From Octopus bimaculoides (lineage: Eukaryota), in NCBI RefSeq assembly GCF_001194135.2, contig NC_068990.1, positions 92,734,561-92,798,560 of the forward strand: DNA of 64,000 nucleotides. The letters are read 5' to 3'. The position numbers were made by a program, and so were the translations under genes. The notes beneath the pieces were generated by a model. The model was given only the letters and a program-made list of their open reading frames with translations. It had not been told where the DNA came from and made no database searches. Shown one piece after another: positions 3,762-12,733 of the stretch. Every line of letters begins with the position of its first letter. The first letter of the stretch is position 1.

Positions 3762-4832
3762 ATGGCCAAAGTTAAAGCTGCTAAAGGTTATAAACACGCT
3801 GAGGTGTTTCCTATATCAGAGATCTTGAAGTCTGCAGATAAAAAGAAAGAATATTCCCTTGTAAAGCTTATTGGTTACGGCGGTTTTGGTTTAATTTACA
3901 CAGCCAGACAAGTTGGTGGTTCGCCGAACGAAGAATATGTTGCTAAAGTCGAACCCATTGGTAACGGTCCACTCTTTAACGAATTCCATGCTTTACAGAA
4001 GATTGCCAGACCAAATATTATACAAGATTATCTAAAAGGTAAACGTTTGACTCATCTTGCCATACCGGAATTCATAGCAAACGGCGTACATGAATATAAA
4101 GGTATTCAGTATCGTTTCATAATCATATCTCGATTAGGAATCGATTTGCAAAAGGTTTTAGAATACAATGGATCTCATTTCGACGAATCTACAGTTTATT
4201 GTGTTGCTAAACAAATGATAGATGCTTTAGAGTGTATCCACCACCATGGCTACGTCCACGCCGACCTGAAAGCCGGTAATATATTATTTGCTGCAGATAG
4301 TAATAAAATAGACAAGGTATATCTGATAGATTATGGTCTGGCTGCGAAGATATTTATAGATAAGAAACACAAGGTGTATAAACCAGAGAAGAAGAAAGCT
4401 CACAATGGAACGTTGTTATATACGAGTCTGGATGCTCATGAAGGTGCTGATCCATCTCGAAGAGGAGATTTCCAAATTCTGGGATTCTGTATGTATGAAT
4501 GGCTTACAGGGAGTTTACCTTGGGAGAAATACTTGGAAAATAAAGAACAAGTGAAACATGAGAAGGAAGTGCTATTAAAGAATCTTTCAAAAATTCCATT
4601 TGGAACTTTAAAAACTTACTTCAAAACTATTGAAAAACTAAAATACGACGAAGAACCAGACTATGAAAAGTTACGACGAATATTCCAGGATGCTTTAAAA
4701 AAACATGGTAAAGGTGGGAAATTGCTGATTCCGACAGGTAAACCGTTGGAAATCATTTCCAACACTAAAACTGCACCGAAACGAGGTATTCCTCGTTCTA
4801 AAGTTATTGCGAAACGCAAAAAACTTGAATAA
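3762..4832 (+). CDS. VRK1: Vaccinia-related (VRK/CK1 group) Ser/Thr kinase, copy 1; intronless CDS, 356 aa
   Basis: Uninterrupted ORF with GYGGFG Gly-loop, VAKVEP catalytic Lys, NGPLFNE, HADLKAGN catalytic loop, VRK-type DYG (not DFG), HNGTLLYTSLDAHEG, SRRGD and LPWE. N-terminus MAKVKAAKG resembles human VRK1 MPRVKAAQAG. The symbol means VRK1-like; orthology is not established. Confidence 0.93.
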   Translation: MAKVKAAKGYKHAEVFPISEILKSADKKKEYSLVKLIGYGGFGLIYTARQVGGSPNEEYVAKVEPIGNGPLFNEFHALQKIARPNIIQDYLKGKRLTHLAIPEFIANGVHEYKGIQYRFIIISRLGIDLQKVLEYNGSHFDESTVYCVAKQMIDALECIHHHGYVHADLKAGNILFAADSNKIDKVYLIDYGLAAKIFIDKKHKVYKPEKKKAHNGTLLYTSLDAHEGADPSRRGDFQILGFCMYEWLTGSLPWEKYLENKEQVKHEKEVLLKNLSKIPFGTLKTYFKTIEKLKYDEEPDYEKLRRIFQDALKKHGKGGKLLIPTGKPLEIISNTKTAPKRGIPRSKVIAKRKKLE

Positions 4833-6834
4833 AATAGGTAGAATCATTTAATTGCCAGTATCTTAACATTTATTATCACATCTTTGAAGATAGTACTCCA
4901 GCATGGCCTTAGCTATATTGGCCCCTTTTTTTTTTTTTTTTTTTGCATTATCATNNNNNNNNNNTGGCCCCTTTTTTTTTTTTTTTTTTTGCATTATCAT
5001 TATTTCTACTACTTAGGTATATCCCTCTGCCTTCTGAGTTAAAATCCCACCAAGGTAAATTGTCTTTCTTTATTTCAAAAATCGATAGAATAAATACCTG
5101 TCAAGTACTTGATTGGTATAATCGACTGTATTCTTTCCTGAAATATTAAAAATATTTACTATATTCGGTTGTTTAGCAGAAATAGTAGGCTCATGAACTA
5201 AATATTTTATTACATTTAAATCTTTTACTTTCTTAATTCAAATCCCAGTTGTTTCATTATGATTTCACCCCTTTAATTAGTTTGTGACTTGCAAGTCTAC
5301 TGACGATGAAATTTAAAGGCAGCCATCTAGTCCCCTTTTTAATAGCTTTCAACCTTCAGGACAATACAGATAGCAATAATACGGTGTAACAGTTTGTCCC
5401 CTAAAAATCTAGGTTTTGTAGAAGCATTTGTTACCGTTGAAGATTGTGAGGTCAACTTTTCCATTCATCCTTTCGGAATTGAGTTGATGTAAACGACTAA
5501 CCTCTGTCCCCAAAAATTTCGGCTTTCTTCCTGTAATAAAGAAATTTATTACTGTGTTTATTGTTGTAGAAAGGCTACAACAAATATTTGCTGAAACTAC
5601 GCATTTAATGTCGCTTAACACTTTTGTATCGAGGAACTCAACGAACTTTCACCTTTTTTTTTTTTTTTTCCTTTCACAGACATTCGGTGAGATGTTTATC
5701 GCCGATGTTTGACTTTATATCCAACCTGTTTGGATTTGAAAACCTTATTTGTTGTATATTTCTTAACATCTTTTAAAAATAAATATATTCCATTTCCGTG
5801 TTGATTTGAATAAATTGCTGCCCCCCCCCTCCTTTTTTTTTTAATCACATTGACGGGACAGCAACAGGTCCTTTCTAAGTGTTGTTTTGGCAAACGATTA
5901 TCCGTGATTTCTTTGTATAAAAGTATATATAAATTGCCTCCTTTGTTTACATTTTGAAGTTTTTATCGAGGTTCAATATCAGTTTTGTTCGAAGAGCGAA
6001 GGGTCAATACTTTCTTTCATTTTCGTGATAAGTAAAAGGTGAAATGTTGCAGAATTTTGGTGTAGTATAAATTATCTTCATCATTTAACGTTCTCCTTCC
6101 ATGCTGGCATGGGTTGAACGGTTTGGAGCTGGCAAGTCAAGACTGCACCAAGCTCTGCCGCCTGCTTTGGCCTGGTTTCTAACCCCTACCAATTCACAGT
6201 AACCAGAAACAATGTCAAGGAAGCACATTAGATAGTTTTGAGAGTTGACCAAATCCTCGTGGCTGTGGAATTATGACCATCAAAGACAACCAAAACATCT
6301 TAGCAAATTTCTTTTACTTATTTCAGTTTGGGTCCCAGGAGACACAAACACAACACCAGCTGTCAAGCAGTGGTGGAAGACAAAGACACGTTTATGTGAC
6401 AGTTGTCTTTCAATTTCCCTCTGCCAAATCCACTCACAAGGCTTTGGTCAGCCCATGGTTATAGTACAAGACACATGCTCAAGGTGCCATGCAGTGGGAC
6501 AGGTCCCAGAACCATATGGTTTGGAAGCAAGCTTCTGACAACACTGCCACACCTGCATATAATGTATATATACACAACTATGCCATCTACATATCCTATA
6601 GATTATATATTGATTAAAAAAGTCAAAAGTGGGAGAGTAAAGCAAAATATTCGCTTTGGACCAGCGCCTGTCAAACCATCCGACCCATACCAGCATGGAA
6701 AACAGACGTTGAATGATGAATCAAAATGCTAATTTTTTATTAATCGGGTTTAAAAGAATATCCTCATTAAGAATCTTTTAGTGTAACCCTTGTTAAAATG
6801 TATTTGCTAGGAAAAAAGTAGCATGGCTCTAAGT

Positions 6835-6986
6835 CAGTGGTTCCTAACCTAGGGTCCACGGATCCCCCAGGGGCCATGAACTAAATTCAAAATTTCATAT
6901 ATATATATATATACACACGTAAAGATAAGCATATTAAAAAGGGTCTATGAGAAAACTTGTTTACATAAAAGGGTTAGGAACCACTG
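6835..6986. mobile_element. hAT-type MITE (152 bp)
   Basis: Perfect 15-bp TIRs cagtggttcctaacc / ggttaggaaccactg; 8-bp TSD ctctaagt / ctttaagt (7/8). Confidence 0.85.
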
Positions 6987-11178: not shown

Positions 11179-11668
11179 CTAATAGCATGACTGCTATTCT
11201 CTGAATATGTGTAAATAGCATCGAAAACTACGATCCTGCAAAAAAATAAACAAAGAAGAAATTCCGTCCCCGTTTGTCGTAATTCTTCAGTTTTCAATTT
11301 CGACCTTTTCAATTTTTGTCTTTTTTTTTTTTTCGAAGAATCGAAATCTGAAATGTTTAAAACGTAAGTGTAAAATATTTTCAAAAGAAAGTCAAAACTG
11401 AAATATTGCAAAAGTTCACCCCTATACTCTTTTAAGAATCGTAATCTATAACACTAAAAGCAAACAGAACCGAAGAAATTACAGCTTTCAGCGCACTAGA
11501 TTATTTCCGACGCTATTCTACATGAACGCCCATATAAAAGCGAGCAAAAGAGATAAACAGTTACGAGAGAAAGCGGGAGATCTATGTGAAAAAGCCAAAT
11601 ACTGTACTTGATTTCATACTTAGTTTTTCTTTCTGTTCACTCGCTTCCACCTATTTCGATAAGGAACC

Positions 11669-12733
11669 TTACAAGTTCGTTTTTTCTTCTGTGGTGGACC
11701 CTCTTCTGTGTCGTGATTCCTGAACCGAACTTCTAAGTTTTCTCTTTCTTGCAGACAATTTCCCGGTCCCTTTAACGACCGGTTTGGGCCTTTTGTCATA
11801 TTTTGCATCCTGGAATATTCGTCGTAACTTTTCATAGTCTGGTTCTTCGTCGTATTTTAGTTTTTCAATAGTTTTGAAGTAAGTTTTTAAAGTTTCAAAT
11901 GGAATTTTTGAAAGATTCTTTAATAGCACTTCCTTCTCATGTTTCACTTGTTCTTTATTTTCCAAGTATTTCTCCCAAGGTAAACTCCCTGTAAGCCATT
12001 CATACATACAGAATCCCAAAATTTGGAAATCTCCTCTTCGAGATGGATCAGCACCTTCATGAGCATCCAGACTCGTATATAACAACGTTCCATTATGAGC
12101 TTTCTTCTTCTCTGGTTTATACACCTTGTGTTTGCCATTTAGAAATATCTTCGCAGCCAGACCATAGTCTATCAGATATACCTTATCTATTTTATTACTA
12201 TCTGCAGCAAATAATATATTACCGGCTTTCAGGTCGGCGTGGACGTAGCCATGGTGGTGGATACACTCTAAAGCATCTATCATTTGTTTGGCAACACAAT
12301 AAACTGTAGATTCGTCGAGATTAGATCCATTTTCTTCCAAAAATGTCTGGAGATTTTTACCGTATTTAGGTATAATTATGAATCGATAGTCCTTGTCTTT
12401 ATATTCATGTATGCCGTTTGCTATGAATTCCGGTATGGCAAGATGAGCCAAACGTTTACCTTTTAGATAATCTTGTATAATATTTGGTCTGGCAATCGTC
12501 TGTAAAGCATGGAATTCATTAAAGAGTGGGCCGTTACCAATGGGTTCGACTTTAGCAACACATTCTTTGGCCTGTGAAGAAGCAACTTGTCTAGCTGTGT
12601 AAATTAAACCAAAACCGCCGAAACCAATCTTTTTTATAATGGAATATCTCCTTCTATCAACAGACTCTAAGATCTCACTTGCTGGAAATTCTGTTGCATG
12701 TCTGTATCCTTTTGCCACGTGAACCTTCTTCAT
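11669..12733 (-). CDS. VRK1: Vaccinia-related Ser/Thr kinase, copy 2; intronless CDS, 354 aa
   Basis: Same intact motifs as copy 1 (GFGGFG, VAKVEP, HADLKAGN, DYG, SRRGD). Paralog of 3762-4832 with a different N-terminus, hinge and C-terminal tail. VRK1-like only. Confidence 0.93.
   Translation of the reverse strand: MKKVHVAKGYRHATEFPASEILESVDRRRYSIIKKIGFGGFGLIYTARQVASSQAKECVAKVEPIGNGPLFNEFHALQTIARPNIIQDYLKGKRLAHLAIPEFIANGIHEYKDKDYRFIIIPKYGKNLQTFLEENGSNLDESTVYCVAKQMIDALECIHHHGYVHADLKAGNILFAADSNKIDKVYLIDYGLAAKIFLNGKHKVYKPEKKKAHNGTLLYTSLDAHEGADPSRRGDFQILGFCMYEWLTGSLPWEKYLENKEQVKHEKEVLLKNLSKIPFETLKTYFKTIEKLKYDEEPDYEKLRRIFQDAKYDKRPKPVVKGTGKLSARKRKLRSSVQESRHRRGSTTEEKTNL

What the first reader, a model, noticed from the sequence alone, without database searches (positions are those of the whole stretch)
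3762..12733. Inverted pair of intact, intronless VRK-like kinase genes
Seen: two full-length VRK-type kinases with every catalytic motif intact and no introns, converging about 6.8 kb apart, while the neighbouring CHID1 and PIGW genes are intron-rich. Known: animal VRK1/ballchen genes normally contain introns, phosphorylate BAF and histones and matter in meiosis, and poxvirus B1 kinase is a homolog that disables BAF. Inference: a retroposed VRK1 that was locally duplicated and kept functional, possibly a lineage-specific germline kinase pair. A viral origin is less likely because the N-terminus (MAKVKAAKG..AEVF...EIL) resembles cellular VRK1, but it is not excluded. I saw no poly(A) remnant or TSD. 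A strong acceptor at 3480 (t-run gcag) suggests copy 1 has a spliced 5' UTR.
Basis: partly seen in the sequence, partly recalled or inferred. Interest (0 to 1): 0.72.

Follow-up and report, generated by a model that had tools for sequence, protein, structure and literature searches.

The report
Old intronless VRK kinase pair, octopus
Two intact, intron-free VRK-type protein kinase genes face each other on an Octopus bimaculoides chromosome; they are an old octopod gene pair that keeps copying part of its sequence between the two copies, and they may be the animal's only VRK kinases rather than spare copies.

Summary
There are two uninterrupted VRK-family kinase ORFs: 3762-4832 (+), 356 aa, and 11669-12733 (-), 354 aa. 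They converge, with 6.8 kb between their stop codons, and all catalytic residues are present. Both assembly gaps lie outside the ORFs, and the layout is collinear with gap-free O. sinensis.

- A retroposed cellular origin fits. A clam VRK1 spreads 535 aa over 26 kb in at least 7 exon blocks. Molluscan VRK1s (42-49% identity) are closer than any viral kinase (37-40% or less).
- The pair is not recent. The same convergent pair sits beside the same FKBP gene in Argonauta, and it belongs to a wider single-exon family (bootstrap 100%).
- Three protein searches found canonical VRK1 in many phyla but none in cephalopods. The intron-bearing parent therefore looks lost (retrogene replacement). This is not proven.
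- Gene conversion homogenises codons 141-311 within each species (paralog dS 0.02-0.07; Obim-Osin 0.19-0.20). Two islands, codons 1-60 and 109-140, stay copy-specific.
- Copy 1 is under clear purifying selection. Copy 2 is constrained long-term, but recently shows omega of about 1.5 in the islands and a tail frameshifted by a 29-nt deletion.

Germline expression and the spliced 5' UTR remain untested. The finding is moderately interesting.

The parts
3762..4832 (+). Copy 1 (c1): single-exon VRK-family Ser/Thr kinase CDS, 356 aa. The kinase domain is roughly residues 20-315. The proximal tail motif 'ALKKHGKGGKLLIP' is retained, and the C-terminus is basic and NLS-like ('KRGIPRSKVIAKRKKLE').
   Evidence: ORF. 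Pfam Pkinase E 5e-19. Human VRK1 E 2e-73. AlphaFold model pLDDT 88.7 with TM 0.8-0.9 to VRK1/VRK2 crystal structures. Called as a single-exon gene in GCA_001194135.2. Omega is 0.23 against O. sinensis and 0.10 against Argonauta.
11669..12733 (-). Copy 2 (c2): single-exon VRK-family kinase CDS, 354 aa. The kinase domain is intact, the proximal tail motif is lost, and the C-terminal tail is frameshifted.
   Evidence: ORF. Pfam Pkinase E 1.6e-21. 86% aa identity to c1. Called as a single-exon gene. Omega is 0.13 against Argonauta c2. In the unconverted islands omega is 1.5-1.75 against the O. sinensis and O. vulgaris c2 genes.
3819..4693 (+). Arm of the inverted repeat in c1. The only nucleotide-level homology between the two loci lies inside the CDS; no flank homology was found.
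   Evidence: blastn of c1 +/-1.5 kb against c2 +/-1.5 kb gives a single 875-nt HSP at 91.9%. The repeat finder reports 843 nt at 93%.
11805..12676 (-). Matching arm of the inverted repeat in c2.
4180..4694 (+). Main gene-conversion tract in c1 (CDS nt 419-933, C-lobe). It has 12 differences in 515 nt against c2. The c2 counterpart is about 11804-12318 (-).
   Evidence: Difference map. For codons 141-311, paralog dS is 0.064 against ortholog dS of 0.19-0.20. The tree groups sequences by species with 92-100% bootstrap. Seven species-specific residues are shared by both copies.
3945..4085 (+). Second, shorter homogenised tract in c1 (CDS nt 184-324), with about 5 differences. The c2 counterpart is about 12413-12553 (-).
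3762..3944 (+). Copy-specific divergence island 1 (c1 CDS nt 1-183: N-terminus, G-loop region, beta3), about 27% divergent from c2.
   Evidence: In the tree of codons 1-60, c1 sequences group together and c2 sequences group together within Octopus (100%). Argonauta c1 joins the Octopus c1 genes (64%).
4086..4179 (+). Copy-specific divergence island 2 (c1 CDS nt 325-418, residues about 109-140: beta4/beta5, hinge, alphaD), about 31% divergent from c2.
   Evidence: In the tree of codons 109-140, orthologs group with 95% support and Argonauta c1 joins the Octopus c1 genes at 80%. The sequences are copy-specific across species.
11672..11709 (-). Frameshifted end of the c2 tail. A 29-nt deletion relative to O. 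vulgaris c2b (junction 11709|11708) shifts the frame. The ancestral 'EEGPPQKKKRTCKV' is still readable out of frame across the stop.
3482..3761 (+). CpG-rich 280 nt 5' of the c1 ATG, inferred to be promoter and/or 5' UTR.
   Evidence: CpG o/e is 1.4 here against 0.39 for the window. The region is 91% identical to O. sinensis, no better than the surrounding DNA. No transcript evidence was available.

Best explanation
The window is Octopus bimaculoides chromosome CM046610.1. The two ORFs are members of a cephalopod-specific family of single-exon VRK (vaccinia-related kinase) genes.

Origin (inferred). The family arose when a processed VRK1 mRNA was retroposed in an ancestor of the sampled cephalopods, so every coding intron was lost at once. 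The multi-exon parent gene appears to have been lost afterwards (retrogene replacement).

Duplication (shown). In an ancestor of Octopus and Argonauta the retrogene was duplicated locally in inverted, tail-to-tail orientation next to an FKBP gene.

Concerted evolution (shown). Since then the two arms have exchanged sequence repeatedly by gene conversion. The C-lobe and part of the N-lobe are homogenised within each species. Two short islands have stayed copy-specific for the whole period: the N-terminus with the G-loop region, and the beta4-beta5/hinge/alphaD segment. The C-terminal tails have also stayed copy-specific.

Function.
- Shown from sequence: both proteins keep every catalytic residue and the VRK-specific motifs.
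- Inferred from family knowledge: both are active nuclear Ser/Thr kinases doing the usual VRK1 jobs, namely phosphorylating BAF and histone tails during nuclear-envelope and chromatin dynamics in mitosis and meiosis.
- Copy 1 is the conservative copy. It has a low omega, keeps the proximal tail motif and has a basic NLS-like end.
- Copy 2 is the derived copy. It has lost the tail motif, its tail has been truncated independently by deletions in different Octopus species, and its islands have recently evolved quickly.
For: Identity and locus:
- The exact proteins map to GCA_001194135.2, CM046610.1, as single-exon gene calls flanked by FKBP_C and Glyco_hydro_18 genes.

VRK membership:
- Sequence matches and motifs.
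- The structure model matches VRK1/VRK2 crystal structures at TM 0.8-0.9.

Intron loss:
- The CDS is single-exon in c1, c2, c3 and P0006 in five assemblies.
- Mercenaria VRK1 spreads 535 aa over 25.9 kb in at least 7 separated exon blocks.

Family:
- The NJ tree puts all short cephalopod sequences in one clade (100% bootstrap) on a long stem among lophotrochozoan VRK1s.

Parent not found:
- Searches with c1, with a bivalve VRK1 and with a family profile list canonical VRK1 from many phyla. The only cephalopod hits are the short single-exon genes.
- The unnamed candidates P0009, P0013, P0129 and P0130 fall among bivalves.

Age of the pair:
- The convergent pair is present in O. sinensis and Argonauta, next to FKBP in Argonauta.
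- 'MAKVKAAKGYKHAEVFP' and the 'ALKK.GK..LLIP' tail are shared by Octopus and Argonauta c1. The 'EGPPQKKKR' tail motif is shared by O. vulgaris c2b and Argonauta c2.

Gene conversion:
- Paralog dS in codons 141-311 is 0.064, 0.072 and 0.020 in three species, against 0.19-0.20 between O. bimaculoides and O. sinensis for any copy.
- Regional trees switch from grouping by copy to grouping by species.
- The differences form a mosaic (permutation p <= 5e-4).
- Both copies share the same species-specific residues.

Selection:
- Omega is 0.10-0.14 against Argonauta for both copies, with p as low as 1e-30 against neutrality.

Not viral:
- The best viral matches are 37-40% identical (Yokapox, Cotia and a Myxoma fragment) and iridovirus is 32%. 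Molluscan VRK1s are 42-49%.
Against: - No poly(A) remnant, target-site duplication or parent locus was found, so retroposition rests only on the wholesale absence of introns. Intron loss in situ through a cDNA is not excluded.
- The absence of a canonical cephalopod VRK1 comes from searches of predicted proteins, not from searches of whole genomes. Listings were cut at 120 rows. An unannotated or very divergent gene would be missed.
- The third clade (P0005/P0006/P0235) has no taxon label, so 'coleoid-wide' is an inference.
- There is no expression or kinase-activity evidence for either copy.
- For copy 2, the recent omega of 1.5-1.75 in the islands (19 N: 3 S) and the frameshifted tail are compatible with relaxed constraint. 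Gene conversion from copy 1 could keep its C-lobe intact without selection.
- Paralog dS in the islands (0.67-0.82) is somewhat below the Octopus-Argonauta ortholog dS (1.0-1.2). The pre-split date of the duplication therefore leans on synteny and shared motifs, plus modest bootstraps of 52-80%.
Confidence: 0.72

Rival explanations
1. The pair is an extra, lineage-specific retrocopy of a still-present intron-containing VRK1. It was duplicated locally and retained for a germline (testis/ovary) function, as many retrogenes are.
For: The genes are intronless and under purifying selection. VRK1 loss causes meiotic or fertility defects in flies, worms and mice (established knowledge; PMC3384087 was retrieved). 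CpG o/e of about 1-1.6 over both genes, against 0.39 for the window, is the pattern that invertebrate tissue-restricted, unmethylated genes tend to show. This is a weak, indirect hint.
Against: No canonical cephalopod VRK1 appeared in three searches that recovered it from many other phyla. The family is old and has at least three octopod members. No expression data were available.
Confidence: 0.2
2. Copy 2 in O. bimaculoides is no longer a functional gene. It is a decaying duplicate whose reading frame is kept open mainly by gene conversion from copy 1.
For: In the unconverted islands, 19 nonsynonymous against 3 synonymous changes separate it from O. sinensis c2 (omega 1.75, not different from neutral). 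The tail is frameshifted by a 29-nt deletion. O. sinensis and O. vulgaris c2a carry an independent 113-nt deletion. The proximal tail motif is lost.
Against: Long-term omega in the same islands is 0.20-0.24 against Argonauta c2 (p 7e-5 to 2e-6). There are no stops or frameshifts within the kinase domain in any of five c2 sequences from four species. All catalytic residues are kept. The copy-specific islands are conserved across genera, which argues for selection on a distinct c2 version. O. vulgaris even carries two c2 genes.
Confidence: 0.2
3. Viral origin. The kinases were captured from a large DNA virus (poxvirus B1-like or iridovirus kinase), which would also explain the absence of introns.
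For: Viral VRK-like kinases are intronless and of similar length, around 300 aa. Foldseek finds Yokapox and Cotia virus kinases with TM 0.65-0.76 (query-normalised).
Against: Identity to viral kinases (30-40%) is no higher than to human VRK1 (38-41%) and lower than to molluscan VRK1 (42-49%). No viral protein was among the best 120 hits of any sequence search. Homology to cellular VRK1 runs from the N-terminal 'AKG.KHAE.FP.GE' segment through the post-kinase 'KL.LP' tail motif, which the ~300-aa poxvirus kinases are too short to carry (inference from length only, not checked by alignment). Flanking DNA holds ordinary host genes and no viral genes. No tree including viral sequences was built.
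Confidence: 0.03

Closest known systems
Animal VRK1 (human VRK1, Drosophila ballchen/NHK-1, C. elegans VRK-1); canonical molluscan VRK1 such as Mercenaria XP protein P0125
   Same: The CK1-group kinase fold is the same, as are all the VRK signature motifs: GxGGFG, V.K.EP, NGPLF, HAD.KA.N, DYG, DAH.G..PSRRGD. The N-terminal 'AKG.KHAE.FP.GE' segment is shared. In copy 1 the proximal post-kinase 'KL.LP' motif and a basic tail are also shared.
   Different: These genes have no introns, against at least 7 exon blocks over 26 kb. They are 326-448 aa, not about 450-600 aa. The long Ser/Pro/Lys-rich tail and the terminal 'QTSPGL' motif of molluscan VRK1 are missing. Positions that are 85-100% conserved elsewhere are replaced, including E219L, D215N, E238Q, W31Y/F and Y78L. 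The stem branch is long.
Retrogene replacement / 'orphan' retrogenes (e.g. amphioxus SYCP1, PMC5803294; human orphan retrogenes, PMC3548309)
   Same: A single-exon gene stands where relatives have a multi-exon gene, and no parent is detectable in the same lineage.
   Different: The loss of the parent is inferred here from protein searches only. In addition, the retrogene went on to form a small family, including a conserved inverted pair.
Arm-to-arm gene conversion in inverted duplicates or palindromes (e.g. primate Y-chromosome palindromes; established knowledge)
   Same: The copies are inverted and have within-species synonymous divergence far below between-species divergence. Species-specific substitutions are present in both arms.
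   Different: The arms are only about 0.9 kb and confined to the coding sequence. The spacer is 2-7 kb of unrelated, TE-rich DNA. Conversion is mosaic and leaves two islands that stay copy-specific across genera.
Poxvirus B1 / B12-type and iridovirus VRK-like kinases
   Same: They have the same fold, are also intronless and are of similar compact size.
   Different: Sequence identity is lower (30-40%) than to cellular molluscan VRK1. The genomic context here is host DNA.

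Membership tests
VRK family of protein kinases (CK1 group) | Protein kinase domain whose best match is VRK1/2/3 rather than other kinases | tested here: met
   Pfam Pkinase is above its cut-off for both copies. PDB phmmer gives VRK1 2e-73, VRK2 6e-66 and VRK3 1e-39, with CK1 next at 1e-27. Foldseek against the PDB puts VRK1/VRK2 on top at TM 0.8-0.9.
VRK family of protein kinases (CK1 group) | Catalytic residues and VRK-specific motifs: G-loop GxGGFG, beta3 Lys, alphaC Glu, H-x-D...N catalytic loop, DYG in place of DFG, and DAHxGxxPSRRGD in place of APE | tested here: met
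   All are invariant columns in the 106-sequence alignment and are present in both copies, in copy-1 numbering: G40-G43, K62, E74, H166, D168, K170, N173, D190, G192, D224-H226, S232-D236.
VRK family of protein kinases (CK1 group) | Kinase activity on BAF and histone H3/H2A; nuclear localisation | not testable with these tools
   Only basic NLS-like tails can be read from the sequence.
Canonical (orthologous, multi-exon) VRK1 gene | Multi-exon structure and a long C-terminal regulatory tail ending in the conserved terminal motif | tested here: not met
   The CDS is single-exon, where Mercenaria has 26 kb and at least 7 exon blocks. The tail is about 45 aa and lacks 'QTSPGL'.
Processed retrogene | Absence of all parental introns in the CDS | tested here: met
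   compared
Processed retrogene | Poly(A) remnant and target-site duplications at the insertion borders | tested here: not met
   Neither 3' flank has an A-tract directly after a poly(A) signal. The c1 flank has a T-run. The c2 flank has an A13 run about 345 nt past the stop, which is unremarkable in 63% A+T DNA. There is no flank homology or repeat. Erosion is expected given the age, with dS above 1 against Argonauta.
Processed retrogene | An identifiable intron-containing parent gene elsewhere in the genome | tested here: not met
   No cephalopod canonical VRK1 appeared, nor in the tree. These were protein-level searches only, and a whole-genome search was not possible.
Inverted duplicates evolving by gene conversion | Paralog synonymous divergence below ortholog divergence, with a tract-wise switch of tree topology | tested here: met
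Virus-derived (poxvirus B1-like) kinase | Closer to viral kinases than to cellular VRKs; viral gene neighbours | tested here: not met
   for similarity. The neighbours are FKBP, CHID1, PIGW and LINE fragments.

The most novel reading that the evidence does not exclude
Cephalopods (at least octopods) discarded the ancestral multi-exon VRK1. They run all VRK functions from a retrogene-derived family that lacks the long C-terminal tail of canonical VRK1. The octopod convergent pair is a unit dating to before the Octopus-Argonauta split. Within it, gene conversion keeps one shared C-lobe, while selection preserves two alternative N-lobe/hinge versions and two different tails. In effect this gives two specificities or regulations on one catalytic chassis.
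Probability: 0.35. Interest if true: 0.55.

Novelty: new member of a known kind. Interest (0 to 1): 0.38.

Why it matters
VRK1 is an essential regulator of the nuclear envelope and chromatin in the animals where it has been tested. Complete replacement of such a gene by a tail-less retrocopy in a whole animal lineage would be a clean natural experiment. It would show which parts of VRK1, such as the long C-terminal tail, are dispensable.

The pair is also a compact example of mosaic concerted evolution. Gene conversion has homogenised about 650 nt of the 930 aligned nucleotides of the two kinase-domain coding sequences, independently in three species. Two short islands resist conversion across genera, which points to the residues likely to carry functional differences between the copies.

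For annotation, the 'VRK1-like' and 'VRK2-like' labels on these genes are arbitrary. Similarity between the copies must not be read as youth.

Tried and rejected
- Candidate cephalopod canonical VRK1s. P0009, P0013, P0129 and P0130 (unnamed Logan proteins, 46-49% identical to copy 1) were suspected of being the parent. The 66-taxon tree places them inside bivalve groups, and P0009's nearest named relatives are Mya and Mercenaria. Rejected.
- Naming unnamed relatives. The listing of cluster members gave no organism names. A literature search for the SRR accessions found nothing.
- Expression evidence from Logan contigs. Contigs encoding P0008 and P0235 are collinear with genomic DNA or with each other and end in low-complexity sequence, so RNA and DNA origin cannot be told apart. 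No Logan contig carries the exact copy-1 or copy-2 protein. This is uninformative, because the near-identical C-lobes would break such assemblies.
- Splice acceptor at 3480. Comparison with O. sinensis shows the motif is conserved, but so is everything around it. Argonauta shares only the CDS. No conclusion is possible.
- First AlphaFold run. The 9-sequence alignment gave an unusable model (pLDDT 49). It was repeated with 106 sequences.
- The look-up of Haliotis P0011 returned nothing on record. Mercenaria P0125 was used instead.
- The bacterial-type promoter/terminator scan is irrelevant for this eukaryotic locus.
- The first blastn attempt failed because of a file-path error and was redone.
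- Literature. No paper combines VRK1 with cephalopods. The two 'vaccinia-related kinase' plus 'octopus' hits were not opened; their titles (mouse folliculogenesis, Purkinje cell dendrites) do not concern cephalopods.

Full report
**What is there**

The window is part of Octopus bimaculoides chromosome CM046610.1 (assembly GCA_001194135.2, about 92.73 Mb). Both predicted proteins map there exactly and are recorded as single-exon genes.
- Copy 1 (c1) is 3762..4832 on the + strand, 356 aa.
- Copy 2 (c2) is 11669..12733 on the - strand, 354 aa.

Both frames are open from ATG to stop.

The assembly gaps were checked first, as the scan's program asked. The N runs at 4955-4964 and 10663-11084 lie outside both ORFs.
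- The 10-N gap starts 122 nt after the c1 stop codon. The same 'TGGCCCC-T(n)-GCATTATCAT' string flanks it on both sides, so it looks like an unmerged overlap. One continuous 2.8-kb alignment to O. sinensis spans it.
- The 422-N gap lies within an ~865-nt insertion bounded by perfect 66-nt inverted repeats. O. sinensis lacks the insertion, and the DNA on either side is collinear.
- The tail-to-tail arrangement also occurs in O. sinensis and Argonauta hians. It is therefore real.

**Are they VRK kinases with intact motifs?**

Yes.
- Both pass the Pfam Pkinase threshold.
- The best solved relatives are human VRK1 (E 2e-73), VRK2 and VRK3, with CK1 far behind.
- A 106-sequence alignment shows that every invariant VRK column is present in both copies: G-loop, K62, E74, H166/D168/K170/N173, DYG at 190-192, and DAH...SRRGD.
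- An AlphaFold model of c1 (pLDDT 88.7) superposes on VRK1 and VRK2 crystal structures with TM 0.8-0.9.
- The family is nevertheless derived. Several positions that are 85-100% conserved in other VRKs are replaced, including E219L, D215N, E238Q and W31Y/F.
- The long C-terminal tail and terminal 'QTSPGL' motif of molluscan VRK1 are absent.

**Intronless, compared with what?**

Mercenaria VRK1 (P0125, 535 aa) occupies 25.9 kb. tblastn recovers at least seven separated exon blocks, most of them inside the region homologous to the octopus ORFs. The octopus genes lack all of these introns. So do their relatives in O. sinensis, O. vulgaris and Argonauta hians, a third paralog on another chromosome (P0007), and an unnamed relative (P0006) on a 390-kb contig. 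Losing every intron at once is the signature of retroposition. No poly(A) remnant, target-site duplication or flank homology survives. That is expected given the age.

**Where is the parent?**

Three searches were run, each listing its best 120 hits: c1 alone, a canonical bivalve VRK1, and a profile of the family.
- They returned canonical 450-600 aa VRK1s from bivalves, gastropods, a chiton, brachiopods, annelids, nemerteans, hemichordates, sponges and vertebrates.
- The only cephalopod proteins were the short single-exon ones. These are P0001/P0002/P0007 from Octopus, P0003/P0004 from Argonauta, and the unnamed P0005/P0006/P0008/P0235.
- An exhaustive HMMER search of 1.84 billion representatives gave the same picture.
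- The unnamed candidates most similar to c1 fall inside bivalve clades in a 66-taxon NJ tree.
- In that tree the short cephalopod sequences form one clade (100% bootstrap) on a long stem within lophotrochozoan VRK1. Its exact position is unresolved. It has three subclades, each at 100%: octopod c1+c2, octopod c3, and the unnamed group.

My reading is that the retrogene replaced its parent, a process described elsewhere as 'retrogene replacement' or 'orphan retrogenes' (PMC5803294, PMC3548309). This rests on predicted proteins, not on genome searches, so I give it about 65-70%.

**Viral origin**

- The best viral structural matches are 37% identical (Yokapox virus), 39% (Cotia virus), 40% (a Myxoma fragment) and 32% (an iridovirus).
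- Human VRK1 is 38-41% identical and molluscan VRK1s are 42-49%.
- No viral protein ranked among the best sequence hits.
- The neighbours are host genes (FKBP, CHID1, PIGW) and LINE fragments.

Viral capture is very unlikely.

**Age of the pair and concerted evolution**

The FKBP / c1 -> <- c2 order is conserved in Argonauta.
- c1 of Octopus and Argonauta share an identical 17-residue N-terminus and the 'ALKK.GK...LLIP' tail.
- The c2 genes share the 'MK..R.A.GYKHA' N-terminus and an 'EGPPQKKKR' tail motif.

The duplication therefore predates the Octopus-Argonauta split, across which dS exceeds 1.

Despite this, the two O. bimaculoides copies are 90% identical in nucleotides. The reason is gene conversion.
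- In codons 141-311, paralog dS is 0.064 in O. bimaculoides, 0.072 in O. sinensis and 0.020 in Argonauta. Any O. bimaculoides versus O. sinensis comparison gives 0.19-0.20.
- Trees of this region group sequences by species (100%, 92%, 100%). Codons 1-140 group by copy within Octopus (100%).
- Both O. bimaculoides copies carry the same seven species-specific residues, and both O. sinensis copies carry the alternatives.
- The differences form a mosaic along the c1 CDS (permutation p <= 5e-4):

| c1 CDS nt | Divergence from c2 |
|---|---|
| 1-183 | about 27% |
| 184-324 | about 3% |
| 325-418 | about 31% |
| 419-933 | 2.3% |

- The two divergent islands are copy-specific across species. In Argonauta c1 they still group with Octopus c1 (64% and 80% bootstrap).
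- Nucleotide homology between the loci stops at the CDS borders.

**Selection**

| Comparison | Region | Omega | Test against neutrality |
|---|---|---|---|
| c1 vs O. sinensis | codons 1-311 | 0.23 | p 4e-6 |
| c1 vs Argonauta | codons 1-311 | 0.10-0.12 | p 1e-30 to 5e-27 |
| c2 vs Argonauta | codons 1-311 | 0.13-0.14 | p 2e-25 to 4e-24 |
| c2 vs Argonauta | islands only | 0.20-0.24 | p 7e-5 to 2e-6 |
| c2 vs O. sinensis / O. vulgaris | islands only | 1.5-1.75 (19 N : 3 S vs O. sinensis; 17 N : 3 S vs O. vulgaris c2b) | not different from neutral |

The c2 tail is unstable.
- A 29-nt deletion frameshifts it in O. bimaculoides, with the junction at 11709|11708.
- An independent 113-nt deletion truncates it in O. 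sinensis and in O. vulgaris c2a.
- O. vulgaris c2b and Argonauta c2 keep a long basic repeat tail.

So 'kept functional' is well supported for c1. For c2 it holds long-term, but recent relaxation or adaptive change cannot be told apart.

**Likely function**

- Shown: both are catalytically competent-looking VRK kinases with basic NLS-like ends.
- Inferred from the family (established knowledge on VRK1, NHK-1 and VRK-1): they phosphorylate BAF and histone tails in the nucleus and control nuclear-envelope and chromatin dynamics in mitosis and meiosis.
- If the parent is indeed lost, at least one member, most plausibly c1, must be broadly expressed.
- The copy-specific islands cover the N-terminal segment with the G-loop region and the hinge/alphaD region. 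Together with the different tails, they are the candidates for functional divergence between the copies.
The only hint is a CpG o/e of about 1-1.6 over both genes, against 0.39 for the window.
- The proposed acceptor at 3480 cannot be evaluated without transcripts.

**Novelty**

The genes are already predicted in public annotations, as 'VRK1-like' or 'VRK2-like'. No paper links VRK with cephalopods. The mechanisms involved are known kinds: retrogene replacement, and conversion between inverted duplicates. This is a new, tidy member of those kinds. It is of moderate interest, and it would be more interesting if genome-wide searches confirm that the ancestral VRK1 is gone.

Noticed in passing
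window 10314-11178: An ~865-nt insertion is bounded by perfect 66-nt inverted repeats (10314-10379 / 11113-11178) and contains the 422-N assembly gap. It is absent from the orthologous spot in O. sinensis. It is either a TIR/foldback element or an assembly artefact.
   Followed up: partly
window 3006-3090: A degenerate (TTAGGG)n-like interstitial telomeric array lies about 700 nt upstream of copy 1.
   Followed up: no
window 4925-4990: The 10-N gap is flanked on both sides by the same 'TGGCCCC-T(n)-GCATTATCAT' sequence. This is probably an unmerged contig overlap, so the true sequence is likely about 35 nt shorter.
   Followed up: partly
L004 (O. vulgaris OX597823.1) 10001-10981 and 19772-20981: O. 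vulgaris carries a ~9.8-kb tandem duplication with two copy-2 genes on the same strand. The second has a long basic tail with 'PPQKKKRIRKVQSKK'-type repeats, like the tail of Argonauta copy 2. It could be a real segmental duplication or a haplotype duplication in the assembly.
   Followed up: partly
window 2288-2500 (-), 7919-8272 (-), 1434-1631 (-), 41940-42494 (-): LINE reverse-transcriptase fragments. One is confirmed as RVT_1. A near-identical RT C-terminal piece occurs at both 1.4 kb and 42 kb. The spacer between the two kinase genes is largely TE-derived.
   Followed up: partly
window 3300-4300 and 11200-13300: CpG observed/expected is about 1.0-1.6 over most 200-nt windows of both kinase genes and their 5' flanks (0.46-0.82 in each gene's C-lobe half), against 0.39 for the whole window. 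This suggests the DNA is unmethylated in the germline.
   Followed up: no
window 12810-12817 (- strand), upstream of copy 2: A CCGGAA(G/A)T (ETS-like) motif about 80 nt upstream of the copy-2 ATG is conserved in O. sinensis and in both O. vulgaris copy-2 genes.
   Followed up: no
window 47663-48055 (-) and 51039-51431 (-): Two exons of a PIGW/GWT1 gene (Pfam GWT1, E 1e-17 and 1e-35).
   Followed up: yes
L006/L007 (O. vulgaris OX597832.1; O. sinensis VCDQ01003735.1): A third single-exon VRK paralog (P0007, 359 aa, 52% identical) lies on another chromosome. It has an insertion of about 10 residues ('VKVKKTTKGYYP') in the catalytic-loop/DYG spacer.
   Followed up: partly
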